Positions 12,510 to 62,342 of a DNA stretch of 64,000 nucleotides are shown piece after piece. The stretch is from positions 1 to 64,000 of IMG/VR virus record IMGVR_UViG_3300035181_000357; one strand, written 5' to 3'. The notes beneath the pieces were generated by a model, which saw only the letters and a program-made list of their open reading frames with translations, was not told where the DNA came from and searched no databases. The position numbers and the translations under genes are program-made. Positions within the stretch are counted from its first letter, which is position 1. Every line of letters starts with the position of its first letter.

Positions 12510-12525
12510 AACTTCCGGAACAAAA

Positions 12526-12605
12526 GAGAAGAGAAGAGAAGAGAAGAGAAGAGAAGAGAAGAGAAGAGAAGAGAAGAGAAGAGAAGAGAAGAGAAGAGAA
12601 GAGAA
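12526..12605. repeat. Perfect (GAGAA)16 pentanucleotide tandem repeat, intergenic
   Basis: 16 units counted directly, between the dCMP deaminase stop and the SbcD start. Confidence 0.95.
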
Positions 12606-12615
12606 GAAATCTTGA

Positions 12616-21030: not shown

Positions 21031-23041
21031 CTAATACCCCACCACCTAGACTTGATACCTTTTGTTGTAAGGCTGAGTATGAATCCGTGTTCCACAGTTC
21101 TTTCTCTTCCACACGCTTCTTGGGTTTCTTAGTCTCGAGAATTGTCTTTCTGACACCAATTTTATTCATAGTCAAATTGGTACCATCAATAAAGTTCTTT
21201 AATTTCAGCGTCTTCACATGAGCCTTCAACATATCTTCGAAATCGTTCTCATCATCAATCTTATCCATACCAGATGTCATATCGAGAAGTTCTGTACCAT
21301 CATCTAGTACACCAGCCGAATATGTCTCACCGAGGATGACTTCAAAGACGCCTTTCTTAGACCTCAGAGTCTCAATGACATACTCATCAATAGTACCTTT
21401 AGCCATTAAGATATGGAGAGTACAAGCGGAATGTGGACTGGCCATACGTAACATTCTTCCTACGAGCTGAAGCATATCTCCCCATGACCAAGGACAATCT
21501 AAGACGATCATGTGAGCAGCTTGTTGAAGATTGATACCTTCTATACCAGCTGCATTGATGAAGATGAGATCATGTTCATCAGACTCCTGGAATAGTCTAC
21601 GATTTATTTCTCTCTTCTTCTCATTCTCAGCACCAGTAATTCTAAGGAAATTTCTATCTGTGAAATGCCCTTCTTTACTGAGCCACTCTAATCTATCGAT
21701 CCAGGATCTGTACTTCGTGAATACAATGACTTTCTGTCCAGATAACTCACCATCAAGCAGATCTAGTAATTCTTCCTCTTTGGACGACAGAGCCTTATTA
21801 TGGAATATCTTTGGATCATCCCTATCTAGTAACGCACTCGAATTCGCTACTAACTGGAAGACAGACATAGCTGTCATCATGTTGTCGATGCTTCTGTCCT
21901 TGACCTCTACTACTTCCCCAGCTACTTTCTTTATACTCGGTGGTAGAACATAGTCGCCATTCGGAATATCCTTTAGGAGCAACTTATATTCTTTGTCACT
22001 GAGATCAAAGGGATGGAATATTGTTGCTAACTTGGGTAGCTTTTCTTTAACTTGTGCCTGGGATCTTCCATAGTAGAATGGACGGATAGCCATCTTGAAA
22101 TCACGGACATTTTTATATCCAACGATGTCCCACTTATATCTGCCTCTACCAATGTGTTTCTTTTTCTGAACACAGAAATTATATTTGAAACTGAACTCTG
22201 TTCCGAACGGACGAATACCAACAGCCCAGGCAATGGAATAGAACTCATCTAGTTTGTTTTTCAATCCTGTGGCTGTCATAACGTGAACACGATGAGCATG
22301 TTTCTGGATATTTTCTACCAACGTTCTAATACTGGTCCCAGCAGATTTAAACTTCTGTCCTTCGTCTAGAATCAGATAGATATGCTCACCATGTGGTGCC
22401 ATCAACTCACATAGTTTTAGGATCTCTTGACTAATTACTTCTTTCTTGTCATCTGGAGCAGGATCGCCATTATCATCAAACTCGCCCTCGATCCTCTTTC
22501 GTTTCCCAATGAGAGATGTGTACTTAGCAATCAACACATCTTTCTTCTTACCATTGAGGAAATGTTCTACCTGTTTTAATCTCGCTTCATTACTCTTTAA
22601 ATCTCTGTATTTATCCTTCATTACCCAGACATTTAAGTCAGAAAATTTCTCGAACTCTGAAGCCCACTGGTACACAGTAGATCTCGTAGTTAGAACTATG
22701 ACCTTAAGATTCTCTACTCTGTCGTAGTGGTAACACGAACTGGCAATGGCACAAATCGTCTTACCTAACCCTACTGCATCTCCAATGATGAGCCTAGGTA
22801 GGATCGCCATATGAGCTATCATCATCGTCTGGTAGTTTCTTGGAGGAATCTGTCCGTATTTGGATCCCATCTTTATGGGGATTGGACCAGATTCAGGATC
22901 ATGCTTTCTGATCCTCTCCAATTTTTCCAGATCTTTATCGGCTATACCCTTATACTGGGTATACCAAGTTACTAGGCCACAGTTTGGATTTGGTACAAAC
23001 CGTTCCTTGAGCTCTCTTATACTGACTTTCTTTTCTGCCAT
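21017..23041 (-). CDS. SNF2-family superfamily 2 helicase
   Basis: GDAVGLGKT, ILDE, MTATGLKN, KVIVFT, GIEGINLQ, QLVGRMLR. Confidence 0.9.
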   Translation of the reverse strand: MAEKKVSIRELKERFVPNPNCGLVTWYTQYKGIADKDLEKLERIRKHDPESGPIPIKMGSKYGQIPPRNYQTMMIAHMAILPRLIIGDAVGLGKTICAIASSCYHYDRVENLKVIVLTTRSTVYQWASEFEKFSDLNVWVMKDKYRDLKSNEARLKQVEHFLNGKKKDVLIAKYTSLIGKRKRIEGEFDDNGDPAPDDKKEVISQEILKLCELMAPHGEHIYLILDEGQKFKSAGTSIRTLVENIQKHAHRVHVMTATGLKNKLDEFYSIAWAVGIRPFGTEFSFKYNFCVQKKKHIGRGRYKWDIVGYKNVRDFKMAIRPFYYGRSQAQVKEKLPKLATIFHPFDLSDKEYKLLLKDIPNGDYVLPPSIKKVAGEVVEVKDRSIDNMMTAMSVFQLVANSSALLDRDDPKIFHNKALSSKEEELLDLLDGELSGQKVIVFTKYRSWIDRLEWLSKEGHFTDRNFLRITGAENEKKREINRRLFQESDEHDLIFINAAGIEGINLQQAAHMIVLDCPWSWGDMLQLVGRMLRMASPHSACTLHILMAKGTIDEYVIETLRSKKGVFEVILGETYSAGVLDDGTELLDMTSGMDKIDDENDFEDMLKAHVKTLKLKNFIDGTNLTMNKIGVRKTILETKKPKKRVEEKELWNTDSYSALQQKVSSLGGGVLDDDE

Positions 23042-23056
23042 CAGTTAACTGATACT

Positions 23057-23323
23057 CTATGATAGTTTGGGAAGGTTCAAAAGTCTTCCATACGGAATCT
23101 GTTCCCATTTCTTTTCAGGATCTTCGATGTGGCACACTTCAATGAGTAATTTGTCATCAAGAGGTAGCCAACCAAATTTGTTATCAAGGAAATAGGGATG
23201 ATTGTCTTCAGTTATCTTTATAGAACTTACAAAGACCCCATTTATTTTTAAGAGATGTCTACTGTGTTGGATCATTTTAGTTATCATATAATTTATGGTT
23301 GGAATCACTGAGATCCCAACCAC
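23057..23323 (-). CDS. Hypothetical protein
   Basis: 88-aa ORF. Confidence 0.45.
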   Translation of the reverse strand: MVGISVIPTINYMITKMIQHSRHLLKINGVFVSSIKITEDNHPYFLDNKFGWLPLDDKLLIEVCHIEDPEKKWEQIPYGRLLNLPKLS

Positions 23324-23489
23324 TAGCGGTTAATTCATATATCATCCCAGTACGTGTAATTTCCACTGGTCTGATTAGTTTACGAGATTTTAGAGATAGA
23401 AGAGTAAGGTCATCCAGCATAGGATGTCCTTCATGGATTCCTTCTGGGTGATAATCTGCAATCTTGCATAACGTTTTGATTGGATCCAT
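23277..23489 (-). CDS. Hypothetical protein (possible winged helix)
   Basis: 70 aa; LKSRKLI...G..YELT..G pattern. Confidence 0.45.
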   Translation of the reverse strand: MDPIKTLCKIADYHPEGIHEGHPMLDDLTLLSLKSRKLIRPVEITRTGMIYELTASGWDLSDSNHKLYDN

Positions 23490-23492
23490 AAA

Positions 23493-23909
23493 TCACTTCT
23501 CTAATGAAGGATCAGGGAATCCGTGAATTGGGCAAGAACCATTAATATAACGACGGCCAGTACCGTATGAATCTTGATTATCCATTTGAGGACAGCGACA
23601 ATTAGGGATCTGGTTCCACCAAGTATGAAAATCACTATTTAGAGGAAACTTCCAAGCCTTCTGGAGTTCGAATTCCAGATTATGAAGAACTTCTGCTAGA
23701 AATCGAAGCTCGGAAACAGCCTTACTCTTTCTGTCTGGCAATCCATCTGGAGCAACTTGAATACTAGCAGCTCGTTCAAACAAAAGATGACGATAGATAT
23801 GAAGTTTTTTAATTTCTTCTACCCGTTTGGCACTGAGTCTCTTGGATTTCACCAGAGCTGGATTTAGCTCCATCAATTCAAGGTCACCATATCGAACAAC
23901 AAGATCCAT
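23493..23909 (-). CDS. Phage protein with Cys/His C-terminal motif
   Basis: ELQKAWKF...FHTWW...CRCP.MDN...G....I...CPIHG; AGGAGG RBS. Confidence 0.65.
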   Translation of the reverse strand: MDLVVRYGDLELMELNPALVKSKRLSAKRVEEIKKLHIYRHLLFERAASIQVAPDGLPDRKSKAVSELRFLAEVLHNLEFELQKAWKFPLNSDFHTWWNQIPNCRCPQMDNQDSYGTGRRYINGSCPIHGFPDPSLEK

Positions 23910-23963
23910 GTATCCTCCTACACATATCTTATTACCCTATAGCTATCTAAATGAACTAATTAA

Positions 23964-23986
23964 AAGGGCCACGTTTAGTGGCCCTT
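23964..23986 (-). terminator. Intrinsic terminator
   Basis: AAGGGCCAC-TAAAC-GTGGCCCTT followed by TTAATT. Confidence 0.65.
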
Positions 23987-24051
23987 GGTCAGATATATCT
24001 GACGTACACTTTATAGTGCCTACTAGTTGATGTGGAATCCAACTATCTTAC

Positions 24052-24942
24052 CTAAGTGAACTCAAGTTCCTTTTTATTTATCCAATATTCATATGGGTCT
24101 TTGAACTTATCTTTCAACATCCATACCCTATGACCATCAGCTTTAAGTCTATTACTGTATTCAGCCCCTACTTCGTCAGAATCTAATATAAATACTAATT
24201 TCAGACCCTCGAGTTGCTTCCAGTGCATGTCAGAAATGAATGCACTACCCAATCCAACCGATTGCATCCCAAGCTGATCACAAGCTACATGATCAAAGAA
24301 CCCTTCTACTACGTAGACAGTCTTGTTGGGATCTATTTTATGAAGACCGAACGTAGCCGATCTACCATGAGAGAATAGCCACTTTGCCCAGAACTTGCTG
24401 ACATGTTCATCCACATATCTGAATACCAGGTTATTTAGATTCCCTTGTCTATCGTAACTAGGCATAACTATCTGCTCTTGAACTAACATATCGGTGGGTT
24501 CACCTAATTGTTCTAACTTGTAGCTAGCGTATTCTAGCTCTTCTTTATAGAATGGGAAATATCTAGATAACGATTTATAATCATGATCTCGGTATCGCCA
24601 TGAACTCATTTGGTATTCATGGATCAGGTCCATTGGAAATGACCTAGCCTTTAGATAGTCCGAGCATATTTCTGACATAGGTTGGCTCAAGATATCGTTA
24701 ACTTCATCTATACATAAATCTGGATGTCTAGGGACATAGTCAGGATACCCGAATTTCGTAGCTATAGACTTGGCATAATCTCTGTTTACGGTATGATGAT
24801 CTAACGCTGCTTTCATCTCACCATGAGGAACTAGTAACTTGGCTAGTTCAATACCCTCTTCTGGTACGAAGTACTCCAGAAATGGTAGAGGATCAATAAC
24901 CAATTTATACCGTAACTTTTTCTTAGGTCCAGGATTCAACAT
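24052..24942 (-). CDS. DnaG-type primase catalytic (TOPRIM) protein 1, no Zn finger
   Basis: VYVVEGFFD...G....V...G.A, ILDSDEVG, KDP.E. Confidence 0.75.
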   Translation of the reverse strand: MLNPGPKKKLRYKLVIDPLPFLEYFVPEEGIELAKLLVPHGEMKAALDHHTVNRDYAKSIATKFGYPDYVPRHPDLCIDEVNDILSQPMSEICSDYLKARSFPMDLIHEYQMSSWRYRDHDYKSLSRYFPFYKEELEYASYKLEQLGEPTDMLVQEQIVMPSYDRQGNLNNLVFRYVDEHVSKFWAKWLFSHGRSATFGLHKIDPNKTVYVVEGFFDHVACDQLGMQSVGLGSAFISDMHWKQLEGLKLVFILDSDEVGAEYSNRLKADGHRVWMLKDKFKDPYEYWINKKELEFT

Positions 24943-24956
24943 ACGTCGTTAATACC

Positions 24957-24990
24957 TATAAAAATAGGCTCCGAAGAGCCTATTTTTATA
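24957..24990. terminator. Bidirectional intrinsic terminator, UUCG loop
   Basis: TATAAAAATAGGCTC-CGAA-GAGCCTATTTTTATA, 15-bp perfect inverted repeat. Confidence 0.85.
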
Positions 24991-25004
24991 CCTACCTAGG
25001 CAGA

Positions 25005-25817
25005 TTAATCGATCAGACCACCACCGTACTGTTCCACGAACATATCGTATAGGAACTCATTTCTAGTTCTCCAAGATGCTAATCTATCTTCTGGAATGTT
25101 TCTCCACCACTGCTTGACAGCGTTGGCACCATAGAGATCGACTAGATCCCCAGGTCCAATGATCTGTCTGCTAGTCTCGGCTGCTGCGGTATCATGGAAC
25201 ATGAAATCATCAAGCTGTCCAAAATGCTGCTTTAACTTAGTTCCAACGGCCTCTTTGAAATCTTCATCAAATCTGGATTTTAATCTGCTTGGTTGATAGC
25301 AGGTTCCGAAGTATTCATCAACCATACTATCAATATCTAGTGACAAGATACAAGAGGTTGGAACCTTAATACCATAATCCTCTAGGAGAGAACCACAGAG
25401 ACAATAAGGAAGGTCTTGAGATTTAGCTAAGTGGGCAAACTTCTTGTACAGGCGAGGAAGCATAGCCTGATATCTCTTCCTCATCTGAACTTGTGTATCT
25501 TCTGGAGGAGCAGCATCGTTCTTCCATGAACGAGTGCCAAACATGGTCTCTAATTCTTCTGTGAGAGTTCCATCACCATATGGTGATGTAGATCCTGGAC
25601 CTTGTACCCAATCACATACTTCTTCGAAGCCAGCCTTTAAAGCTTCTGCTAGGGTTCCAGTATACTTAAATGGTTTTCTAGGCATAGCTTGCTTCTCCAC
25701 AGGAACAGCAACGGAATCATTATCGAAATCATCCTTGAAAGGGGCACGGGCACCTAACCTATACTTATTTAGGGCTACTTTAAATTTATCTAACTTCGAC
25801 ATATTAGGCTCCGCCAC
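25005..25817 (-). CDS. Hypothetical protein
   Basis: 270-aa ORF. Confidence 0.6.
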   Translation of the reverse strand: MAEPNMSKLDKFKVALNKYRLGARAPFKDDFDNDSVAVPVEKQAMPRKPFKYTGTLAEALKAGFEEVCDWVQGPGSTSPYGDGTLTEELETMFGTRSWKNDAAPPEDTQVQMRKRYQAMLPRLYKKFAHLAKSQDLPYCLCGSLLEDYGIKVPTSCILSLDIDSMVDEYFGTCYQPSRLKSRFDEDFKEAVGTKLKQHFGQLDDFMFHDTAAAETSRQIIGPGDLVDLYGANAVKQWWRNIPEDRLASWRTRNEFLYDMFVEQYGGGLID

Positions 25818-26223
25818 CTAGATCATCTGCTTTATCCATTAATCTCTTACCCTTATCGAGTTGAGCCTTCATTACATTTAAAACAACTTGTACGTCGTCT
25901 TCCCACTGGTGTGGATCGGTCATCAATACAGGTTCACCATGCTGTTTTAATACAACCATGACACAGAAAGCAGTATTTCCGAAATGAATAGGAGCACCTG
26001 CTAATCCATATGAACTGTCTTTTCCCATATTTACTAGCTCGATGTCGGCAGACCACTCTTCATCAGAGCCAGAACCAAACATAGCTGGTACATCAGTATA
26101 AGTTCTTAGAGGGATCCCAAGAACCTTAGCGTACTCTTCTGGGGATTCTGGTTTTTCTGATCGGCCGAAACCAGGTAGATCACTAGAATCCAATGCCGTT
26201 TTACGGGTCGTGAGTTTAGACAT
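25804..26223 (-). CDS. Hypothetical protein
   Basis: 139 aa, N-terminal MSKLTTRKTA, AGGAG RBS. Confidence 0.6.
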   Translation of the reverse strand: MSKLTTRKTALDSSDLPGFGRSEKPESPEEYAKVLGIPLRTYTDVPAMFGSGSDEEWSADIELVNMGKDSSYGLAGAPIHFGNTAFCVMVVLKQHGEPVLMTDPHQWEDDVQVVLNVMKAQLDKGKRLMDKADDLGGGA

Positions 26224-26267
26224 TAAAATCTCCTAAAAATATATCACTCAGCTTAGTATTACAAAGT

Positions 26268-27116
26268 TCACGGTTTTATATCGAACTTATACCCAAGACC
26301 AATAACTGAAGTCGTGCCTATGAATCCAGCAGTTAACTCCATTTTATTATTAACTCTGTAGCCACCGAGAATTCCAGCTGTCCATTTCTTGGTATCAAAA
26401 TTGTAACCAGCTACTGGTGATACTGTAAATCTAGGCAACGCTTTATCAAGGCCAAACGCACTCGGTGTGAACATATTTTTAGCAGATTCTAATGGGATCT
26501 CTTCTTTACCGATCAGCACGTTATTCTCATCATAGACTTCTCTAGACATTTTAGCAGCTGATCTGTACCCACCGTCTTCTAACTTCCATTCACCAAAAGA
26601 GGTTGTAAACAGCTCTTTGTTGTTCTTCCATTTGGAACCAGTAAAGGCCAGACCTAGGGGTTTTGATGGATCATAATTGAGATTAAGACTAGTTAGTGCT
26701 GGGGCATTTGGTCGTTCTTGAACCAACTTCACATCTTTTACCACACCAGTTGCATCTCGAGATCCACCAATAATCTTGGTCAAATCCATCATATTTGCAT
26801 TAATCTTACCCACAGTAGTAAACAAACTCTGCAACTGCGCATTGTTTGCATTCATGTACTGAACCATTTGATTGCCTAGAAGCTTAGTAGCTTCTGTTTG
26901 GGCTTCAGAATTCTTCTTCAGTATCTCATTGGTAGATTGATATGCCTCTCCAACTTTCTTGAAGTCAGATTGAAGAGTGGAAGTCATTGCTACTTGTCGC
27001 TTTAACTCATTCTTAGCATCGATATAATCGTTAATGAAGAAGGTGACAGCTAATACAGCTGCCACCCCTAATATGATCTTTATCTGTAGCGCATAAGCTT
27101 TGATTGTTTCTAGCAT
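26268..27116 (-). CDS. Membrane-anchored coiled-coil protein with C-terminal beta strands (spanin-like?)
   Basis: N-terminal TM helix IILGVAAVLAVTFFI, coiled coil, amphipathic beta C-terminus ending LGYKF. Confidence 0.45.
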   Translation of the reverse strand: MLETIKAYALQIKIILGVAAVLAVTFFINDYIDAKNELKRQVAMTSTLQSDFKKVGEAYQSTNEILKKNSEAQTEATKLLGNQMVQYMNANNAQLQSLFTTVGKINANMMDLTKIIGGSRDATGVVKDVKLVQERPNAPALTSLNLNYDPSKPLGLAFTGSKWKNNKELFTTSFGEWKLEDGGYRSAAKMSREVYDENNVLIGKEEIPLESAKNMFTPSAFGLDKALPRFTVSPVAGYNFDTKKWTAGILGGYRVNNKMELTAGFIGTTSVIGLGYKFDIKP

Positions 27117-27121
27117 ATTTC

Positions 27122-28174
27122 CTACTTATTGATTAGCCTTGCGAAATTAAGAGCACCTCTTGCAGTAGCATCGAGGGGATACGTAGCGGAACGAGCTGTC
27201 CCGACACGGAAACGAACATTGAGATTCTTCATAAAGATGTCATTGAACATCTTATCGAAACCAGGAATTAAGCTAGTACCACCAGAATAAATAACTGGTA
27301 CCAGTTCCTTAATCTCAGTACGATTTGCTGGCATTGCAAAGAACTCATTTACAGCATCTACTAACTTAGTTAGAAGTTCCTTGTACATCAAGGAGATAGC
27401 TTCTGCCTGTCTCTCTGACTGGGCATCATGTGATGTATCAGGGTTGATAATTCTGCCAGTAACAACATCTACTCCATGTTCCTTCAACATTGTAATGTGA
27501 GAGGAAAGAGAGTTAGTGGCCTTGGCTGCACCATCATCGATGAAATCACCACCGAAAGGAATGCTGAACATTCTAACAGGTAGAGATTTGTACGTGCATG
27601 CTACGTTAATCATACCAGCACCAAGAGATACACTAAGTGCGGTTAATGGTAGTTCATCCGCGTTCTTTGGAGACATAGTCTCACTGTAGGTTACAGCTAC
27701 GGCCTCGTTAATTGCTCTAGCCTTGAAACCTAATCCGTTGATGAGTTCCTGGAAAAATCTGCTGTGAAAGTTTAGATCGTTCGACTGAATGACTCCGTTC
27801 TCAAAAATTGGACCCGGAATAGAGAAAGCAGCTACTTCTCCTGTTCCTTTGCCTAAGATCTTCTCAAGAATCAGAGATACTACAGCCTTACCATCCTCTT
27901 CCTTAGAACTTATGAAACCCTTAGATAGTGGGCGACGCAGTTCACCACCGAGAGCCCCAGCAAGCTCAACAGCATCTGCACCTACTACATAAAGGTTCTC
28001 TGCACCTTGTACGAAAGAGATTCCGGACATCTCGAGCATAGGTGCTTGCTCCAACGGAAGTGATAAGAAGCAATCTCGTACGCTGCTAATCTCTACCTTT
28101 GCGTCAGTGCTTTGTACTGCGGCCACCATGAACGCAGTTCCAACGTCAACGCCTTGGGGATTTACTTTAGACAT
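27122..28174 (-). CDS. Actin-like ATPase (MreB/ParM/FtsA superfamily), probable start MSKVNPQ
   Basis: Phosphate-1 GVDVGT, connect-1 NEAVAV, phosphate-2 SLGAGMINV, GGDFID, adenosine YSGGTSLIPGF, connect-2 ARG. Confidence 0.85.
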   Translation of the reverse strand: MSKVNPQGVDVGTAFMVAAVQSTDAKVEISSVRDCFLSLPLEQAPMLEMSGISFVQGAENLYVVGADAVELAGALGGELRRPLSKGFISSKEEDGKAVVSLILEKILGKGTGEVAAFSIPGPIFENGVIQSNDLNFHSRFFQELINGLGFKARAINEAVAVTYSETMSPKNADELPLTALSVSLGAGMINVACTYKSLPVRMFSIPFGGDFIDDGAAKATNSLSSHITMLKEHGVDVVTGRIINPDTSHDAQSERQAEAISLMYKELLTKLVDAVNEFFAMPANRTEIKELVPVIYSGGTSLIPGFDKMFNDIFMKNLNVRFRVGTARSATYPLDATARGALNFARLINK

Positions 28175-29276
28175 TCTTTCTCCTTTTAACTTGGATGTCT
28201 TTTCTAGATTTCTTACTACGCCCATCATTACATACTTCTTCTGAAGTTACTGATAGCCAAGGAGCCATCTTAGACAGCTCTTTTATAGAGATTTTATAAG
28301 AATTCCCGTACTTGGTAATGACGTCTTTATATGACTTAATGTCCTTATCTTGCCCATACATAGTCTTAGTAATGTGATATTTAAGGACGCACCAGGCAAT
28401 GACTAGATTCTTAGGTCGTTTGATCTTATCTTCTTTGATAGCTTCAAACAACTTGGCAGCGATCGCTCTCACATCTTTCTCACCAGCGAAGATCATGTTC
28501 TTGACGAAGGCAGTAATCATCTGCTGATTTGTTCTCTTTACCTTAGGTTTGATCTTCTTATCCACATGCTCGAGATCTTTGACAGCATCTTGGAATTCAT
28601 AGTCATCAACAGTCTTAATCTTAATATTTATCACTCGTTCTCCTACCAGATCTTCTATCAACAGAGATTTCAACTCTGGACCATCCTCTAAGATAGGTGA
28701 GTAATAGAATACCCTTAGATCTTTGGGAATAGTGTCTAAATTCAATAAATTCTTAAGTGGGGTCTGAACCATCATTGATGTTGTCTTGAGATCGACTTGT
28801 ACCACAGCTCTAGTTGCTGCTATGCTCTTTACTATACCACAGAAGTCTCGAGTATGACCATCTAAGATTCTGACAAAGGAGCCAGGTACTATCCCGATGT
28901 TCCTATGATCATACGTTTCCTTACATTTAGTAACAAGTCCTTGGATATAACTATCTTCTATGTTTATGAGACGATTTGGATGGGTTCCCTCACCATGGCA
29001 TACCAACCATACTACACCTGTCACAGATCGCAATTTCACAATCTTCTTAGGATCTAGGGAACGGACGAATATATAGCAATCCGTCATGAGTTCGAAGGAT
29101 TCAAGATTCCTATCAGAGACGGGAATAAAGATTTCTGCTGGGTCTTCTCTGAAGATGTTCTTGAGACTTTTCCCAATTCTCTTTATAGTCTCTTCACTAG
29201 TCTTTTCAGAACGAAGCTCAATAACATTCCATATTTTGCCAGTTAATTTAGAGGTATCACCGTATGTTAATATCAT
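28167..29276 (-). CDS. NusG-family transcription factor (NGN + KOW) with C-terminal extension
   Basis: WNVIEL...EIFIP......YIFV.....VTGV NGN domain; PGSFVRILDG..RDFCG.V KOW motif; ~190 extra C-terminal residues. Confidence 0.8.
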   Translation of the reverse strand: MILTYGDTSKLTGKIWNVIELRSEKTSEETIKRIGKSLKNIFREDPAEIFIPVSDRNLESFELMTDCYIFVRSLDPKKIVKLRSVTGVVWLVCHGEGTHPNRLINIEDSYIQGLVTKCKETYDHRNIGIVPGSFVRILDGHTRDFCGIVKSIAATRAVVQVDLKTTSMMVQTPLKNLLNLDTIPKDLRVFYYSPILEDGPELKSLLIEDLVGERVINIKIKTVDDYEFQDAVKDLEHVDKKIKPKVKRTNQQMITAFVKNMIFAGEKDVRAIAAKLFEAIKEDKIKRPKNLVIAWCVLKYHITKTMYGQDKDIKSYKDVITKYGNSYKISIKELSKMAPWLSVTSEEVCNDGRSKKSRKDIQVKRRKNV

Positions 29277-30190
29277 ATATCTCCCAATACTTTAATTCTA
29301 CCCTTAAACATCTGCATGATATCAGAGTTATCTTCGGGTTCGACATTTTTCTGAGGTGAATCCTCTAGCACTACCTGCTTGACCTGAGCCTTTATCTTGG
29401 TCACACATTTAGACAACTCATACAAGAACAGAGGTAGAATATCGACAGATGTCTGGACATTCCACTTTAGGAATAATGTGGTAACTTTCTCAGTTTCAGG
29501 AAAAGAACTCCTGATGGCTTCCCTGATCCTAGTTTCTTCTTTGGATATATACTCATCTTTGTCGAAGAAGCATTTTCCATAGTATGAGAACATATAGTTG
29601 ATAACTGTTTTATCTTCTTGTTCTTCACAGATAGCCATAGCCTCTTCTAGATTTCCGGTAGCCACAGCAGTGAAAGTTTTATATGCGATCTCATCTTCGT
29701 TGTTTTCCAGATTATCGTTCACTGATTCCCTGGATATCTTTCCTATCTTAGACAGAGTAGCTATGAAATTCTTAGCTTGTCTAATATTCCCTCTCGACTT
29801 CCTTACTACGCGATTCAAACCCTCTACAGTAAATCCAATGTTATTCTTAGAACAGAGAGCCATCAAGTACCCAACCATGTCTTTTTGATTTACCTTATTA
29901 AGATGAATCCTACAAGCTCTGGATCTGGTTGTTTCAGGTAATTTATCGTAATCCTGAACTTCCATAAAAGTCGTATGATGCTCAGAACTCAGTTCATTGG
30001 AGATAGTATAGGATATATTTTCTTTATCCAGTACTGAAGCTAGGTAGTTTATTATACTAGTTTTACCAGTACCTGGAGGTCCATCAAGGATTACCAATCT
30101 CGGGAATCTCTTTATATCAGTAAGTAGACCTCTGATGAGTTTCAGAGGTCTATCTTGCCCGATTATCTGGTCTAGACTTAGTAGTTCCAT
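29273..30190 (-). CDS. DnaX/clamp-loader-like AAA+ ATPase
   Basis: LDQIIGQD, GPPGTGKTS, SRA (SRC-like), SRGNIRQA sensor-2. Confidence 0.8.
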   Translation of the reverse strand: MELLSLDQIIGQDRPLKLIRGLLTDIKRFPRLVILDGPPGTGKTSIINYLASVLDKENISYTISNELSSEHHTTFMEVQDYDKLPETTRSRACRIHLNKVNQKDMVGYLMALCSKNNIGFTVEGLNRVVRKSRGNIRQAKNFIATLSKIGKISRESVNDNLENNEDEIAYKTFTAVATGNLEEAMAICEEQEDKTVINYMFSYYGKCFFDKDEYISKEETRIREAIRSSFPETEKVTTLFLKWNVQTSVDILPLFLYELSKCVTKIKAQVKQVVLEDSPQKNVEPEDNSDIMQMFKGRIKVLGDI

Positions 30191-31459
30191 TTACTCTTCT
30201 GATTCCGTTAAGAACGATACAGGCTTCATACCAGTAGTGGTATCATCGGCTTCGATCTCTAGTACACGCTTGATCAGTGATACATATAGATCTTCGAAGA
30301 TCGATAGACAATTTAGGTAAGCTAATGTATACTCACTGTAAGAGTGGCTATCTTCAGAATGACTATCGATAAAATTCTTGGTCAATTCAACATTCTTCAG
30401 AACCTGAGTCAAGCTAGTGCAGATATTAACATTGACTTTCCAAGACTTTGGACCATCTTCGATACCAACTGAGACATCAGAAGCCAAGACATTCCAAGAT
30501 TCGATCTCAGACAGAATCTCCCAACAACTAATGTTATCGGTTGCACCTACAGATGCCTTCAACTTCTCATCACAGATGACAGAAGGGGTCTGTAGGTCAA
30601 CGACATAACTGTCGTCTGAATACTGGCAGTACGTCTTTTTCTTCTTATATAGAAGACCGATTAATGGATAACGCTCCTGTAACTCAGCAAACTTGACATC
30701 GTCAAGATATGAACCCACGAGTTCATCCATCTCTGTGTTGATGATGTTCCCAGCTAGAATCTTCTTGAAGAAGTCGTATTGCCATGGTGTCCCATTAGGT
30801 CCAAAATACAGTGTAGTAGCTTTGAGTTCAATATCGAAAGACGACTTAAAGAAATCATTAAGATACATCAGTGACTTATCGTCCGTCATATCTGTGTAGA
30901 TTCTTCCAGTCTCGAAATCAACGAGCACCACGTTCTGCTTTCTATCAGAAGTAATCTCCTTGTCTAACATATCTTTAACTTCATTCTTGTCATCAGAATA
31001 GAGAAGACGGAAAGGCATATGATACATGTTAGCAGCGATCTGTTCCTTCTGTGATTCCTGATCCTCAAGGTCGATACGTTTACGCTTTACAAACCAGAAA
31101 GCAGCGGCAGTATCGGATAGCATCATAGACTCTAAACCGCCATAGCAAGGACTGAAATCTACCTCGTCACCACCAACATCCAATACTGAATTTCCAACGA
31201 CTCTGTCAACAAGGGCATAGAAGATATCTTCGGCATCCTTGTTTGTTGGGTTGATTGGGTTGATAACATCTAATCTTGCCTGACTGATGGGATTGATCCC
31301 GACCGTCATTTCATTGGCTTCATCCCAAAGTCGCACATTAGCTGCAGCAGCTGAGATACCTAGCCAATCATTAAAATTCTTAAACTTCTCTAAATCGTCT
31401 TCCTTCGTATCTTGAGCTAACTCTAGTCTAGCCCATGAAGATTTCCCGTATAAAGACAT
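30191..31459 (-). CDS. Hypothetical protein, possibly RdgC-like
   Basis: Central DKNEVKD.L...VVLVDFETGRIY......L.DFFKSSF resembles the RdgC core by eye; weak. Confidence 0.35.
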   Translation of the reverse strand: MSLYGKSSWARLELAQDTKEDDLEKFKNFNDWLGISAAAANVRLWDEANEMTVGINPISQARLDVINPINPTNKDAEDIFYALVDRVVGNSVLDVGGDEVDFSPCYGGLESMMLSDTAAAFWFVKRKRIDLEDQESQKEQIAANMYHMPFRLLYSDDKNEVKDMLDKEITSDRKQNVVLVDFETGRIYTDMTDDKSLMYLNDFFKSSFDIELKATTLYFGPNGTPWQYDFFKKILAGNIINTEMDELVGSYLDDVKFAELQERYPLIGLLYKKKKTYCQYSDDSYVVDLQTPSVICDEKLKASVGATDNISCWEILSEIESWNVLASDVSVGIEDGPKSWKVNVNICTSLTQVLKNVELTKNFIDSHSEDSHSYSEYTLAYLNCLSIFEDLYVSLIKRVLEIEADDTTTGMKPVSFLTESEE

Positions 31460-31460
31460 G

Positions 31461-32258
31461 TTACTCCTCTTCCTCTAAAATGGTTATGTTTGTAGCCATC
31501 ACTGACTCGTTCTTATCTATAATACGTCTTAAAGTGTCCCTAAGTATCAATGCGTGTTTCCTATTCTCTAAGGCAAGGCTGGCGTCCTTCCCAGGTGTCT
31601 TCACTATCTCCACAGTCATAGACTTGAAGGTTCTGGCTACGATCGTCATGGCTTCAATACCGACAGGATCCTGGTCGAACATGAGATATAGGGTCTTGAC
31701 TCCAAGCATCTGGAGATAGGCTTCCTGTTTTCTACCGATCTTCTTTGTTAGCGAGCAGAGAACTGGAATATCTGCATTTAGTGCTCTAACAGCTACGAAA
31801 TCGAAAGTACCTTCCACGACTAAAACATATCCTAGTTTCTGGATCCTGGCGAGCATCTCATTACTGTTCCCAAGCCAACTTGGTCCTAGAAAATTATCTC
31901 TATCCCCTGCGATCCAATATTTTGCACCATCTTCACCTAGAGGTTTTGTCTGTGCCTTCATTGCTACATCGTTAAGATCATATTGTGGGAATACGAATCT
32001 TGGACCAGGTTCAAATCCCTTTGGTACATACATAATAGTATGATCTGATACACATTTGGTCAAGTTAGGTTTGATCAAGTCCTCAACCTGTCCCCAATTA
32101 CGTTCTTTAATGATCTTTATGACACTTGCTTGTACCCAACCAGACTTACCCTTCTCTTCTAACCTCTTGTACAAGCCCTTGACTTTCCTGATCAAGAACT
32201 CTACATCATCCCACCACTTTTTACTCATTCTTCCCCATCCAACATTCCTAATACCCAC
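31461..32258 (-). CDS. TOPRIM primase-like protein 2
   Basis: VLVVEGTFDFVAV, LYLMFDQDPVG, PGKDAS. Confidence 0.7.
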   Translation of the reverse strand: MGIRNVGWGRMSKKWWDDVEFLIRKVKGLYKRLEEKGKSGWVQASVIKIIKERNWGQVEDLIKPNLTKCVSDHTIMYVPKGFEPGPRFVFPQYDLNDVAMKAQTKPLGEDGAKYWIAGDRDNFLGPSWLGNSNEMLARIQKLGYVLVVEGTFDFVAVRALNADIPVLCSLTKKIGRKQEAYLQMLGVKTLYLMFDQDPVGIEAMTIVARTFKSMTVEIVKTPGKDASLALENRKHALILRDTLRRIIDKNESVMATNITILEEEE

Positions 32259-32593
32259 AGGAGAACGGCTACGTCGCGATATTCACGAGGTAGGATTTGT
32301 GGATCCTTTATCTCTTCTCTGAAACCTTCGAGCAATTCTTCTTTTGTATATTTAGGTTGGAACAGATCATGATCTTTGCAAGAATCGGGATCTTTAGATT
32401 TACAGAAAGTACATCTATCCTCACCAAAATCTAGGTGTTTCACCATATCAGGATTTACGAAAGATAGTGCACCTTTACAGTTACCGACACATGGTTCAGA
32501 ATTTCTTTTAAGAAACTTCTTCTTGTGTCTGTGGATCAGGTCTCTTAGCCTTTTCTGTATTTCCTGACTTGATTTTATTTTTATCTCTGCCAT
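32225..32593 (-). CDS. Hypothetical Cys-rich protein
   Basis: C..NC ... C.FC....SC motifs. Confidence 0.5.
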   Translation of the reverse strand: MAEIKIKSSQEIQKRLRDLIHRHKKKFLKRNSEPCVGNCKGALSFVNPDMVKHLDFGEDRCTFCKSKDPDSCKDHDLFQPKYTKEELLEGFREEIKDPQILPREYRDVAVLLWVLGMLDGEE

Positions 32594-33230
32594 CTGTGGT
32601 TATTTCCATAATGGATTGTGGATCTATTTCTTTAATCGTAGGACCAGTCGGTCCTTCTGCTACTTGATACACTCTGTCAGCAGCAGAAGCTAATTCAGGT
32701 TGATGTGTTACGGCCAGAATCTTGAACCCATGGTCATTTGTGAGAGTTTGTATCAATTCCGATACCTTTGGTAAATACTCTTTACTGACATTATTAAAAC
32801 TCTCGTCAACTGCCAGGAACTTAGCCATTTTAAATCTTTTAATCATGATTACACGAAGAAGAAACGAGGCTAGATTGACAACCCCACCACCAAATGAATC
32901 GAAAGGATCACCAACGAGATCACCTTTCTTAATCTGGATCTTGTAGGTAGTTCCTTTAGCTCCATCTTTCTTTTCGATGACTAAACTGGTCTTCTTACCG
33001 AAGACTAGACGTATACCACCAGTTACAATGGATTCAATCTTACCGATCCCCTTGGAACTGACTATCTGTGTCATCTTGTCGATAGTTCCCTGGGCCTTGA
33101 CCAGATTTACTTTGGTCTCTAGCAAGGAATCCACCCTCTTTCTGAGAGAATCTATATTACTGTTCTCCGAATCGAGGACACGGGATTGGGAATCTACAAA
33201 ACTACTGAACTCTTGAATGTTTATCATCAA
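32508..33230 (-). CDS. SbcC/Rad50-like ATPase, C-terminal half only
   Basis: Short coiled coil, signature SFGGG, Walker B FLAVDE, H-loop VTHQ. No Walker A. Confidence 0.85.
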   Translation of the reverse strand: MMINIQEFSSFVDSQSRVLDSENSNIDSLRKRVDSLLETKVNLVKAQGTIDKMTQIVSSKGIGKIESIVTGGIRLVFGKKTSLVIEKKDGAKGTTYKIQIKKGDLVGDPFDSFGGGVVNLASFLLRVIMIKRFKMAKFLAVDESFNNVSKEYLPKVSELIQTLTNDHGFKILAVTHQPELASAADRVYQVAEGPTGPTIKEIDPQSIMEITTDGRDKNKIKSGNTEKAKRPDPQTQEEVS

Positions 33231-33245
33231 ATTACATGATACTCA

Positions 33246-59714: not shown

Positions 59715-62342
59715 TTACTCAGCTACTAATTCAGGAGCTAGTTCAACATCCGATACAAATTCGCTTTCAGAACCTTCTTCAGAATCCTCTAGTTCCACAC
59801 CGAGATTATCGGCTAGATTCTCAACACCCTCAGCGAGATGGTCTAGATTACTATAGATCTCATTTAAGGACAAGCTAACTTCTTCTGGTTCCTCATCGGC
59901 TACACGTCTGAGACCAACAGCAAACTTCTTAGCAATACGCTTCTTAGCAATACGCTTCTTAGCAATACGCTTCTTAGCAATACGCTTCTTAGCTAGTTTG
60001 CCTTCCTTGGCTTCACCTTCTAGAGCCTCTTCCTCTAAGGATTCACCCTCTTCAGGAACAAGATCGTCAGGAGTCAGATTTAGATTCTCAGCAAGAGCAT
60101 CTAGAGCTTCTACCTGTTCCATGAACTTATCACGGAGTTCGGCAATGGCTTCACCTAGAGCTTCTGGCTCTTCCTCAGCAATACGCTTTAAAGTAGCGAA
60201 CTTGGAGGCAGCAGTCTTGGCTTCAGACAAGGCTTCTGCTTTTGCAGCTGCTTCCTTTTTCTTGGCGATAATCTGTGATAATCTTCCCATTGGTTTCTCC
60301 TGTGAACTGGTTACAGCGCTATCTTGCTTTTTAACAGACTTTTCTTCGTCTTCCATCTTGACTAGTTTCTTGGTATAATCGTTGACCAATTTGACCAGCA
60401 GATTGCTCTTATCGATGTTACCTTCTTTAATGAACTTGGTGATGCACTCTCTTAGGTTTACAATGGCCTTCTTGTAATATGAGAATGACTTCTGAGTCTT
60501 AGCTTCGAAATCCTTCCAGATCTCGTCGCTGACTTCATTTGTCAGAGTAGCATCAAAGAGAATAGCTAGATTTGGACCAACTTTCTTACCCATTGTTCTG
60601 GTAAGCCATGGGAAGAATTCAGCCTTGAACTCTTTAAGATCAGAAGAGCTCTCTAACTCAGTGTGGTCGTCAAGAGTTGGCTTGGTATCGAAAATATTAT
60701 AGGTCTCGTCACCAGTTCCAAATTCTGGCTGTACTTCCTGGTTCTTGATCTCAACCTTCTTCTTCTCTTCACCAGTCTCTGGATCGATCTCAACGGTCTT
60801 GTAAACCTTACCATAACCATAGTGTTCTCCGACCCAATCTCTGGCCTTGGATACAGAATAGCTGAACATCTTCTTCAAGAAAGTCGTTACCTGCTTCTCT
60901 AGTGGGTTGTCCTTGTCAGGAGCTCTGTTAGGATCAAACTTTAACAGAGTCTTCAACTGATACAAGTGAGTAATGATCATGTGGTGAGCAGCTTCGTCAC
61001 GCAGATCCTGGTCAGCAATAACCTTCTTGTAGATACTCTCCAAGTATGAACTCCAGTTCATATCCTCATCTACAGGGAGCCCAGCTTCCCTGATAGCAGT
61101 CTTGACATACAAGTCAAAGTCTTTGTTGTAGGAGGTGATCATGAGGTTTGAGAATCTTCTTAAGGTAGAGCCGAGGAGATTTGTTAAACTTGCTAGATGG
61201 GTTTTATTTAAGGTTTCTATTGAGCCGTCAAGATATCTTGCTTGAATTCTGAGATCATCAGTGGTTCGGGCAGCAGCGAGTACGCGGAACGGACGAGAGC
61301 CTGATGGCACCACATAGGACCCAAGCTTAAAGGCCTTCTTTAGACTTGCAATATTGGGTTCCATTGTTTCTAAGAAATTAGAAACTTCTTGGAAGTACTC
61401 TTCTTCATTCTGTGTAGCATTATAATAGGCCGAATCATAATTGTCTAAGTTCTCTTCGAAGTCACCAGCTTGGCCGTATTCTTCATACTTATCAAATGCG
61501 TGTAAGAATTCATATAGTTCAGATAAACCTAATTGGAAATCACTATATTCACTCTCTGTCATATCAAGCCACTGCATTACCTGAGCATCGTCGTTGGCAT
61601 CGATGAAATTCTGCCAGGCTTCACAGTCAGATGTTTCTTCCAAATCCTGAGGTAGATTCTTGACTACCTCTACTGGAATTTCATCCATATCGATATCTAA
61701 TGACATCTGGTGGGATTCTAGATCGAATCCTGGGAATCTCTCCTCGATTTTTCCTACATCATGGGAATTATCATCACAGAAACGGGACCAGGCATTACTC
61801 GTACCACTAATGTCAGTGTTATTCATGACGTCTTCAGCATCATCAAAGGAATGATATTCCTGGCCTGACTCTTCTGCATAATTCTCAAAAGCGGCATTGA
61901 CCAGTACTAATACTTTATTCACTTCTCCGAGAGTGCCCTCTTTAGGTAACTCGTTGAGGAGCATATCCCCTTGCCCATTTCCAGCATAGCCGTTTCCAAC
62001 CCACTGGCCGAATCCACCATTCTGAACCTGATAATGAAGCTTGGCGAGTGCAAACAACATCTTATGGGTATCGGAAGGAAGCTGCTTAAGCATCTCCTGC
62101 ATACTTTTATCACCCATCTGTTGCCAGTTCTTGTGAATCTCGCTGAGGGCCTTCTGAAGATAATCTTCATAGAACCCTGCGAACTTCGCATGAGGATTTA
62201 CAGCCTTAGACGATACAGGCTTCTCACGACCTTCTAGACCACGGTCTACAGAACCATCACTGGTTTCCTTTGCTTTCAGATGCTCGAAAGCTTCCGATGC
62301 AACAACGGTCTTAAATATATCTGCGGATAGTTTGTGACGCAT
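59715..62342 (-). CDS. Multidomain acidic protein: DMP19/DUF4375-like + sigma-like + scaffold-like repeats
   Basis: YQVQNGGFGQWVGNGY...DNYDSAYY; DEAAHHMI...KFDPNR...TTFL; duplicated EEPE..L.E......LA.NL C-terminal helices. Confidence 0.55.
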   Translation of the reverse strand: MRHKLSADIFKTVVASEAFEHLKAKETSDGSVDRGLEGREKPVSSKAVNPHAKFAGFYEDYLQKALSEIHKNWQQMGDKSMQEMLKQLPSDTHKMLFALAKLHYQVQNGGFGQWVGNGYAGNGQGDMLLNELPKEGTLGEVNKVLVLVNAAFENYAEESGQEYHSFDDAEDVMNNTDISGTSNAWSRFCDDNSHDVGKIEERFPGFDLESHQMSLDIDMDEIPVEVVKNLPQDLEETSDCEAWQNFIDANDDAQVMQWLDMTESEYSDFQLGLSELYEFLHAFDKYEEYGQAGDFEENLDNYDSAYYNATQNEEEYFQEVSNFLETMEPNIASLKKAFKLGSYVVPSGSRPFRVLAAARTTDDLRIQARYLDGSIETLNKTHLASLTNLLGSTLRRFSNLMITSYNKDFDLYVKTAIREAGLPVDEDMNWSSYLESIYKKVIADQDLRDEAAHHMIITHLYQLKTLLKFDPNRAPDKDNPLEKQVTTFLKKMFSYSVSKARDWVGEHYGYGKVYKTVEIDPETGEEKKKVEIKNQEVQPEFGTGDETYNIFDTKPTLDDHTELESSSDLKEFKAEFFPWLTRTMGKKVGPNLAILFDATLTNEVSDEIWKDFEAKTQKSFSYYKKAIVNLRECITKFIKEGNIDKSNLLVKLVNDYTKKLVKMEDEEKSVKKQDSAVTSSQEKPMGRLSQIIAKKKEAAAKAEALSEAKTAASKFATLKRIAEEEPEALGEAIAELRDKFMEQVEALDALAENLNLTPDDLVPEEGESLEEEALEGEAKEGKLAKKRIAKKRIAKKRIAKKRIAKKFAVGLRRVADEEPEEVSLSLNEIYSNLDHLAEGVENLADNLGVELEDSEEGSESEFVSDVELAPELVAE
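59926..59993. repeat. Perfect 15-nt coding repeat x4.5 encoding (KKRIA)4
   Basis: TTCTTAGCAATACGC repeated exactly. Confidence 0.95.

What the first reader, a model, noticed from the sequence alone, without database searches (positions are those of the whole stretch)
27122..28174. Phage-encoded actin-like ATPase
Seen: all five actin-fold motifs, with Ser in place of the usual phosphate-2 Asp. Known: large phages use tubulin (PhuZ/TubZ) spindles; actin-like proteins are known mainly from plasmids and a few prophages. Inference: a filament system for positioning phage DNA or capsids, or for interfering with host MreB/FtsA. No adjacent parC repeats or obvious adaptor were found; the neighbouring TM coiled-coil protein (26268..27116) is a candidate membrane anchor.
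Basis: partly seen in the sequence, partly recalled or inferred. Interest (0 to 1): 0.7.

Follow-up and report, generated by a model that had tools for sequence, protein, structure and literature searches.

The report
Volactin-family actin gene in jumbo phage
A roughly 300-kb tailed phage from sediment and microbial mats carries an intact, strongly conserved gene for a bacterial/archaeal-type actin of the "volactin" family, which turns out to be widespread in large phages that have no tubulin; what the phage uses it for has not been studied.

Summary
Window 27122..28174 (minus strand) encodes a 350-aa actin-fold ATPase with all five motifs. It scores 156 bits against Pfam PF25216 Volactin (cut-off 35). 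Its AF2 model (pLDDT 92) matches Haloferax volactin at TM 0.84, against about 0.65 for MreB, MamK and FtsA.

The Ser at the phosphate-2 Asp position (with Asn at the second acidic position) is a signature of the whole family. Chromosomal haloarchaeal volactins share it, so it is neither a defect nor a peculiarity of this gene.

The host record is a 210.6-kb, 69%-complete virus contig with portal, TerL, PolA, 40 tRNAs and a tmRNA. The gene sits in the replication/transcription module and overlaps the stop codon of a NusG-like gene. It is under strong purifying selection (dN/dS about 0.05-0.1).

The family has at least 965 90%-identity clusters and 223 IMG/VR contigs. All seven near-complete carriers examined are 180-467 kb, and 0 of 22 carriers has a tubulin.

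The gene is accessory. The closest cultured relative, the 309-kb phage Tunturi 5, keeps both flanking genes and lacks the actin. This weakens the idea that the TM neighbour is a dedicated anchor.

No centromere repeats or adaptor were found. Filament formation is inferred from homology and was not shown.

The parts
27122..28174 (-). Volactin-family actin-like ATPase gene (350 aa plus TAG stop)
   Evidence: ORF and translation. Pfam PF25216 at 156 bits. AF2 pLDDT 92. TM 0.84 to volactin D4GU28.
28130..28153 (-). Phosphate-1 motif GVDVGTAF (res 8-15; D10, G12 and T13 invariant)
   Evidence: Alignment A1 and family-wide motif counts.
27695..27715 (-). Connect-1 AINEAVA (res 154-160; catalytic-position Glu E157 invariant)
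27599..27634 (-). Phosphate-2 SVSLGAGMINVA (res 181-192); S183 and N190 replace the two acidic residues of MreB and MamK
   Evidence: Profile alignment to MamK. Invariant in A1. Shared with haloarchaeal volactins.
27266..27292 (-). Adenosine motif IYSGGTSLI (res 295-303; G298 and G299 invariant)
27149..27169 (-). Connect-2 ATARGAL (res 336-342; G340 invariant)
28180..28185 (-). Shine-Dalgarno AAGGAG, 5 nt before ATG 28174
   Evidence: Sequence read directly.
28167..29276 (-). Upstream NusG-like (NGN+KOW) putative transcription antiterminator with an unknown C-terminal half. Its stop overlaps the actin start by 8 nt. It is conserved in actin-less relatives.
   Evidence: Weak KOW and PHROG antiterminator hits. 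36% id to Tunturi 5 gp25, annotated 'transcription antiterminator'. Present next to the actin in 9 of 9 close loci.
26268..27116 (-). Downstream single-pass membrane protein: TM about res 10-28, then a helical stretch, then a beta-rich C-terminal domain. Its start lies 5 nt after the actin stop. It belongs to the phage backbone and is not actin-specific.
   Evidence: Hydropathy 2.34 over res 10-28. Homologues in 5 close loci and in Tunturi 5 gp26. The AF2 model has low confidence.
29273..30190 (-). Clamp-loader AAA+ ATPase; part of the replication module that holds the actin gene
   Evidence: PHROG 5846 E 3e-18. Syntenic with Tunturi 5 gp24.

Best explanation
The gene encodes a member of the volactin family (Pfam PF25216) of prokaryotic actins. 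It is carried as an accessory gene by a roughly 300-kb tailed jumbo phage.

Shown:
- It has an actin fold with intact nucleotide-binding motifs.
- Volactin is its nearest relative by both sequence and structure.
- It sits tightly packed in the phage's replication/transcription gene block. Its start overlaps the stop of a NusG-like gene, and the next gene starts 5 nt after its stop.
- It is under strong purifying selection.
- The family is common in large phages that have no tubulin.

Inferred: like Haloferax volactin, it binds ATP and forms dynamic filaments. The phage makes them together with its replication proteins. It probably uses them to organise the infected cell in space, by placing or moving replicating phage DNA or assembly sites. 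That would be a role like PhuZ in phiKZ-like phages or AlpC in prophage CGP3. The partner that would link filaments to cargo is not identified. It is not encoded as a recognisable adaptor next to the gene.
For: - Identity: Pfam Volactin at 156 bits against a cut-off of 35. AF2 pLDDT 92. Foldseek gives volactin D4GU28 TM 0.84 and E 7e-33, with every other hit at TM 0.66 or below. The PDB profile search hits MamK, FtsA and MreB.
- The family motif S-x-G-[AG]-G-M-x-N is shared with chromosomal haloarchaeal volactins. Volactin forms dynamic, ParM-like filaments in vivo (PMC10869688).
- Trees put the protein in a 100-supported clade of IMG/VR viral sequences, within a family separated from MreB at 100.
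- Context: SNF2 helicase, two Toprim proteins, clamp loader, NusG-like gene and PolA. The junctions are overlapping or 5 nt apart.
- Selection: dN 0.13-0.15 against saturated dS 1.4-2.9 versus the 82-83% relatives. The gene is identical in 4 public runs.
- Distribution: at least 965 clusters; 465 50%-clusters at E<=1e-30; 223 IMG/VR contigs; ESM Atlas clusters 79-100% viral. The seven carriers at least 90% complete are 180-467 kb, and 0 of 22 carriers has PF00091 tubulin. The same search finds phiKZ PhuZ at E 2.6e-8.
- No tubulin, ParB or integrase above cut-off in the window's own record.
- Link to DNA within the family: bacterial paralogues are fused to a ParB-type HTH.
- Precedent: AlpC/AlpA (PMC4446434).
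Against: - No polymerisation evidence exists for this protein. The homodimer prediction gave no verdict.
- No adaptor, centromere repeats or DNA-binding domain are at the locus.
- No neighbour is conserved across the phage clades that carry the family. A single common mechanism is therefore not supported by gene context.
- The gene is dispensable for the lineage. Tunturi 5 and four IMG/VR relatives with the same NusG-like gene lack it.
- Both phosphate-2 acidic residues are replaced, so the ATPase kinetics may differ from those of ParM or MreB.
- The host and the timing of expression are unknown.
Confidence: 0.55

Rival explanations
1. The phage actin acts on the host rather than on phage cargo. 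It would co-assemble with or displace host MreB or FtsA, or build its own scaffold, to change cell shape or size or to block division during infection.
For: Cellular volactin is a cell-shape factor in the rod-to-disk transition (PMC10869688). No DNA adaptor is at the locus. The gene is accessory, like many host-takeover genes. In two clades the flanking genes encode membrane proteins.
Against: The protein is only about 15-18% identical to MreB and FtsA, with TM about 0.65, so co-polymerisation is unlikely. It has no amphipathic membrane-binding helix at either end (sequence). It sits in a replication module, not among early small host-takeover genes.
Confidence: 0.2
2. The filament would be tethered to the membrane by the downstream TM coiled-coil protein (26268..27116), and the two would form a dedicated two-gene system.
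For: A single-pass membrane protein lies directly downstream in nearly all close loci: 8 of 9 IMG/VR loci (family c44 or c67) plus L189, while L007 and L188 have one gene in between. The gap in the window is 5 nt. Another clade has TM proteins on both sides of the actin. Volactin filaments touch the membrane by their tips.
Against: The TM protein's homologue follows the NusG-like gene in Tunturi 5, whose complete genome has no volactin. Its short N-terminal tail is not conserved in length or sequence, whereas the C-terminal domain is. Extra genes are inserted between the pair in L007 and L188. Its topology is unresolved and its AF2 model is poor.
Confidence: 0.1
3. This would be ParM/AlfA-type segregation. 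The phage persists as a plasmid-like prophage or in a carrier state, and the actin partitions genome copies at host division.
For: Actin-based partition is the best-known role of mobile-element actins. Volactin dynamics resemble those of ParM. Some carrier records are flagged 'provirus' by IMG/VR. A bacterial subfamily carries a fused ParB-type HTH.
Against: No parC-like repeats, ParR-like adaptor, ParB or integrase above cut-off were found in the 210-kb record. ParM is not among the 50 listed PDB fold matches or the sequence hits. The gene lies inside a lytic-type replication block with 40 tRNAs elsewhere in the record. The record is only 69% complete, so lysogeny genes could have been missed.
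Confidence: 0.07
4. It is a non-polymerising actin-fold ATPase, acting as a chaperone-like, kinase-like or regulatory protein that merely keeps the fold.
For: Both phosphate-2 acidic residues are replaced. There is no direct evidence of self-association.
Against: The same substitutions occur in volactin, which polymerises (PMC10869688). Hsp70 matches are weaker (TM by query 0.56-0.59, TM by hit 0.35-0.41), and no sugar kinase appears among the listed matches. The subdomain layout matches MreB-like actins across the full length.
Confidence: 0.08

Closest known systems
Volactin (VolA, HVO_2015, UniProt D4GU28) of Haloferax volcanii; Pfam PF25216
   Same: Same family by HMM (156 bits). About 29-34% identity to haloarchaeal members. 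TM 0.84. Same length and domain layout. Same S-x-G-[AG]-G-M-x-N phosphate-2 signature.
   Different: Volactin is a chromosomal, apparently essential cell-shape factor of an archaeon. This gene is an accessory gene of a tailed phage, in a replication module, in a separate all-viral clade on a long stem.
AlpC/AlpA of Corynebacterium glutamicum prophage CGP3
   Same: A phage-encoded actin made early and needed for efficient phage DNA replication (PMC4446434). It is the closest functional precedent.
   Different: It belongs to a different actin family: PF25216 does not ring in the C. glutamicum control genome. AlpC has a co-transcribed DNA-binding adaptor, AlpA, and a binding site in its own promoter. 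Nothing comparable was found here.
PhuZ/TubZ tubulin spindles of phiKZ-like jumbo phages
   Same: A cytoskeletal NTPase encoded by a jumbo phage. The proposed role of positioning replication is analogous.
   Different: PhuZ and TubZ have the tubulin fold, not the actin fold. The volactin carriers examined have no tubulin (0 of 22, with a working phiKZ control). They also show no match to phiKZ chimallin, but that was a single-sequence search without a positive control, so the negative is weak.
ParM/ParR/parC and Alp7A/AlfA plasmid partition actins
   Same: Actin fold on a mobile element. Volactin dynamics are described as ParM-like.
   Different: ParM is not among the sequence or listed fold matches. 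No adaptor gene or centromere repeats were found.
MreB, MamK, FtsA, BeeR
   Same: These are the next-best structural and sequence relatives: TM about 0.5-0.66, and profile E 7e-11 (MamK) to 1e-3.
   Different: MreB carries D-x-G-G-G-T-[TS]-[ED] and MamK D-I-G-A-G-T-T-D at phosphate-2, with both acidic residues kept. In the tree MreB lies outside the family at 100 support. The Pfam MreB_Mbl model does not report this protein.

Membership tests
Volactin family (Pfam PF25216) | Scores above the curated gathering threshold of the family HMM over its full length | tested here: met
   156.2 bits against a cut-off of 35, profile positions 3-319 of 321. The genome search gave the same result, and the control rings above cut-off only in H. 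volcanii.
Volactin family (Pfam PF25216) | Structure closer to volactin than to any other actin family | tested here: met
   D4GU28 TM 0.84, rmsd 3.1 and E 6.8e-33, against salactin 0.64 and MreB/MamK about 0.65.
Volactin family (Pfam PF25216) | Family-specific phosphate-2 motif S-x-G-[AG]-G-M-x-N | tested here: met
   SVSLGAGMINVA here and G[IV]SFGAGMTN[VI]C in 38 haloarchaeal genes. MreB controls have D[IV]GGGT[TS][ED].
Volactin family (Pfam PF25216) | Forms dynamic filaments | not testable with these tools
   The homodimer prediction gave no verdict. This needs biochemistry or imaging.
ParMRC / Alp-type partition system | Adjacent small DNA-binding adaptor gene and centromere-like repeat array | tested here: not met
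   The neighbours are a NusG-like protein and a TM protein, with no DNA-binding family hit. No repeat arrays lie within 23000-33500.
ParMRC / Alp-type partition system | Sequence or structure groups with ParM | tested here: not met
   ParM is absent from the 16 PDB profile hits and from the 50 listed Foldseek PDB hits.
MreB/Mbl | Matches the MreB_Mbl HMM (PF06723), carries D-x-G-G-G-T phosphate-2 and clusters with MreB | tested here: not met
   PF06723 is not reported at E<=0.1. The phosphate-2 motif differs. MreB lies outside the family at 100 support.
AlpC-type prophage actin | Co-transcribed AlpA-like adaptor that binds the operon's own promoter | tested here: inconclusive
   No recognisable adaptor or repeated site was found, but AlpA-like proteins have no model in the libraries used. 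PF25216 does not ring in the C. glutamicum control genome.
Non-filament actin-fold ATPases (Hsp70, sugar kinases) | Best matches are to Hsp70 or hexokinase-type proteins | tested here: not met
   DnaK matches rank below all prokaryotic actins (TM by query 0.56-0.59, TM by hit about 0.35). No sugar kinase is among the listed matches.

The most novel reading that the evidence does not exclude
Volactin-family actins would be a second, independent phage cytoskeleton. They would be the actin counterpart of PhuZ, used by a broad and so far uncultured set of tubulin-less jumbo phages to organise infection. The family would be primarily viral, with the haloarchaeal cell-shape protein volactin, and perhaps the bacterial ParB-HTH fusions, as offshoots exchanged with viruses.
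Probability: 0.3. Interest if true: 0.8.

Novelty: new member of a known kind. Interest (0 to 1): 0.55.

Why it matters
Phage cell biology currently rests on one cytoskeletal system, the PhuZ tubulin spindle with the chimallin nucleus, plus one prophage actin, AlpC. Here an actin family known from a single archaeal study is found in hundreds of large phage contigs. All the near-complete carriers examined exceed 180 kb, and none of the 22 carriers has a tubulin. If these proteins polymerise during infection, large phages have found at least two independent ways to organise a big replication cycle inside a small cell. The origin of archaeal volactin would also become a question of exchange between viruses and hosts. 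The papers searched contain no description of volactin-family actins in phages. The family model and the automatic labels ('Volactin domain-containing protein', 'actin-like ATPase involved in cell morphogenesis') already cover them, so the gene itself is catalogued and only its biology is open. The practical obstacle is that no cultured phage in GenBank carries it.

Tried and rejected
- Megablast of 24-32 kb against GenBank phages found no match.
- The search for related loci with the single protein found no relatives. It needed the alignment.
- PHROGs has no family for the actin.
- hhalign between the neighbour-gene clusters of different phage clades found no shared flanking family. The only exception was a 57-residue N-terminal match between clusters 4 and 53.
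- Pfam on ten flanking proteins from other clades gave nothing.
- The complex prediction homodimer run scored 0.00 and gave no verdict. It is not evidence either way.
- The AF2 model of the TM neighbour, from 6 sequences, had pLDDT 45. It was too poor for a fold search and was not pursued.
- Promoter and terminator scans of 23-34 kb were at or below chance.
- The phiKZ chimallin protein search over 23 records was blank. It had no positive control, so it is only a weak negative.
- Laying reads from four runs showed no variation inside the actin gene, so they gave no within-population selection signal. dN/dS was taken from the 82-83% relatives instead.
- TAG recoding was considered because of a CTA-anticodon tRNA. 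It was rejected because coding density is 0.93-0.99 under table 11 and all three stop codons are in use.

Full report
**The observation**

Listing ORFs shows a minus-strand frame ending at 27122.
- AAGGAG lies 5 nt upstream.
- The ATG overlaps the TAA stop of the upstream gene (ATGTCTAA).
- Homologues start just before the first motif.

The 350-aa product has the five actin-fold motifs in columns that are invariant or nearly so across 31 homologues. In a profile alignment to MamK, S183 and N190 take the places of the two acidic residues of phosphate-2.

**What it is**

- Pfam places the protein in PF25216 Volactin at 156 bits (cut-off 35). FtsA and Salactin appear only as weak, sub-threshold echoes.
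- An AF2 model built on the alignment is confident (pLDDT 92).
- Against Swiss-Prot models it matches Haloferax volcanii volactin at TM 0.84 with 29% identity. Salactin, MreB, MamK, FtsA and DnaK follow at TM 0.66 or below.
- Solved structures give the same ranking among MreB, MamK, BeeR and FtsA.
- A profile search of the PDB finds MamK, FtsA and MreB.

I then fetched 79 loci from species-representative genomes and read the matching gene in 78 of them. After removing duplicates, 38 were haloarchaeal and 36 came from other archaea or bacterial MAGs. Four bacterial MreBs served as outgroup. The phosphate-2 signature S-x-G-[AG]-G-M-x-N is present in all groups of the family, including the haloarchaeal genes. 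MreB has D-x-G-G-G-T. The Ser is therefore a family signature. Volactin forms dynamic, ParM-like filaments in vivo (PMC10869688), so the substitution is no argument against polymerisation.

**The carrier**

The window is the first 64 kb of a 210,611-bp IMG/VR virus record estimated to be 69% complete. The record has:
- a portal, TerL and a family-A DNA polymerase;
- 40 tRNAs and a tmRNA;
- no tubulin, no ParB and no integrase above cut-off.

Table 11 fits throughout, with coding density 0.93-0.99. Near-identical DNA is present in four sediment or microbial-mat runs.

The closest cultured phage by TerL (47% identity) is Tunturiibacter phage Tunturi 5, a 309-kb jumbo myovirus of Acidobacteriota (PMC11924767). 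Its G+C content is very different (58% against about 40%), so the host of the window's phage stays unknown.

**Local anatomy**

The actin lies in a co-directional block:
- SNF2 helicase;
- two Toprim proteins;
- a homologue of a recombination-associated exonuclease;
- clamp loader;
- a NusG-like (NGN+KOW) protein;
- the actin;
- a single-pass membrane protein.

The junctions on either side of the actin are an 8-nt overlap and a 5-nt gap. No tandem or dispersed repeat arrays lie nearby.

Against its 82-83% relatives, dN is 0.13-0.15 while dS is saturated. That gives omega of roughly 0.05-0.1.

**Comparative context**

- The family has at least 965 90%-identity clusters.
- It has 465 50%-identity clusters at E<=1e-30.
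- It occurs on 223 IMG/VR contigs.
- ESM Atlas clusters of it are 79-100% viral.

In the nine closest IMG/VR loci the order clamp loader, NusG-like gene, actin is fixed. A bitopic membrane protein of one of two families follows, directly in eight loci and after one intervening gene in L007. More distant clades have quite different neighbours. These include putative structural proteins with a Zn-ribbon protein, a CspA-like protein, or small membrane proteins on both sides. Profile comparison found no flanking family common to the clades.

Of 22 large carrier records, none has a tubulin match. The seven that are at least 90% complete are 180-467 kb. The same search detects phiKZ PhuZ. GenBank phages contain the family only in two uncultured huge phages.

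**The gene is accessory**

Tunturi 5 has clamp loader gp24, antiterminator gp25 (36% identical to the window's NusG-like protein) and then gp26. gp26 is not an actin (hhalign probability 0.3%). It is the homologue of the window's membrane protein (30% identity, E 5e-30). The complete Tunturi 5 genome has no PF25216 match. Four more IMG/VR relatives that carry the NusG-like gene also lack the actin in the DNA held for them.

Both flanking genes therefore belong to the backbone, and the actin is an insertion between them. Two further points weaken it:
- the protein's N-terminal tail is not conserved;
- extra genes separate the pair in L007 and L188.

Its topology and fold remain unresolved.

**Phylogeny**

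Both trees are quick IQ-TREE runs with SH-aLRT support only, rooted on a long MreB branch.
- The family is separated from MreB at 100.
- The window's protein is in a 100-supported clade with IMG/VR sequences, on a long stem.
- The archaeal volactins (Halobacteria plus Archaeoglobaceae) form one small clade inside a group otherwise made of viral and MAG sequences.
- A tight clade of 'bacterial MAG' sequences spans many phyla on short contigs. This looks more like mis-binned mobile DNA than vertical inheritance.

The direction of transfer between viruses and archaea cannot be settled here.

**Hints from domain fusions**

- About 700-aa family members carry a LAGLIDADG intein at or near phosphate-2. 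This fits that site being functionally critical.
- A bacterial chromosomal subfamily pairs a plain volactin with a ParB-HTH-volactin fusion. That links the family to DNA binding.

Neither feature is present in the window's gene.

**Mechanism**

The best-supported reading is a polymerising, ATP-driven actin made with the replication proteins and used to organise infection in space. The precedents are PhuZ and AlpC. The steps from 'volactin homologue' to 'forms filaments', and from there to 'positions phage DNA or assembly sites', are inference. The self-association prediction was uninformative.

The rivals, in order of weight, are:
1. manipulation of host shape or division;
2. a membrane-tethered two-gene system;
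3. plasmid-type partition;
4. a non-polymerising ATPase.

**Novelty**

The gene is a clear new member of a known family, and phage-encoded actins have precedent. In the papers I could search, nothing describes the scale of this family in large tubulin-less phages, or studies its role there.

Noticed in passing
G000 (the window's record) 183201-194645, outside the window: A block of 40 tRNA genes plus a tmRNA (tag AEPQLALAA). One tRNA has anticodon CTA, which reads TAG (aragorn labels it 'Pyl'), at 192253-192328. Coding density under table 11 is 0.93-0.99 and TAG ends 44 of 240 ORFs, so nothing points to recoding.
   Followed up: partly
Proteins P0136 and P0142 (about 700 aa), and many other roughly 700-aa hits: Volactin-family genes are interrupted at or near the phosphate-2 motif by an intein with a LAGLIDADG homing endonuclease (Intein_splicing plus LAGLIDADG_3).
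   Followed up: partly
L191:6860-10676 (247-kb metagenome contig with housekeeping genes); also L193: A bacterial chromosomal tandem pair: a plain 336-aa volactin followed by an 891-aa protein made of a ParB-type HTH, a volactin domain and a long C-terminal extension. The HTH_ParB fusion recurs in P0161, P0175, P0193 and P0207.
   Followed up: partly
Protein P0187 (1160 aa): A volactin domain fused to Wzz/GNVR and a ParA-like P-loop domain, a layout like a polysaccharide co-polymerase tyrosine kinase. This could be a real fusion or a gene-calling artefact.
   Followed up: no
L188:7060-7260 (closest relative, 256-kb contig): A 66-aa gene of Pfam PF21825 (crAss001_48-related; labelled 'Sequestin' in the precomputed table) is inserted between the actin and the membrane-protein gene. 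It is absent from the window.
   Followed up: partly
L188:984-1910 and 11415-12065; L189:1147-1944: In the two closest relatives, opposite-strand genes with weak or faint homing-endonuclease-type hits (NUMOD3, GIY-YIG) are inserted in the same replication module.
   Followed up: no
window 12524-12607 and 59925-59993: A perfect (AAGAG)x16.8 microsatellite lies in an intergenic gap. A perfect 15-nt repeat, 4.6 copies, lies inside ORF 59715..62342.
   Followed up: no
window 24957-24990: A perfect 15-bp-stem hairpin (TATAAAAATAGGCTC / GAGCCTATTTTTATA, 4-nt loop) lies in the gap between ORFs 24052..24942 and 25005..25817. It may be a transcript end or a regulatory site.
   Followed up: no
L083-L160 (genome-contig loci labelled as bacterial MAGs): Closely related volactin genes sit on short contigs binned into Patescibacteria, Acidobacteriota, Chloroflexota, Planctomycetota, Omnitrophota and others, and form one tight clade. 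This suggests mis-binned phage or mobile DNA rather than cellular genes. Their neighbours share nothing with the IMG/VR loci examined.
   Followed up: partly
AlphaFold DB clusters A0A897MTD5 (775 aa) and M0ASS7 (937 aa): Cellular proteins with an N-terminal volactin-like domain (TM 0.77-0.78) and long C-terminal extensions. They are annotated as FtsA-like and chromosome-segregation-ATPase-like.
   Followed up: no
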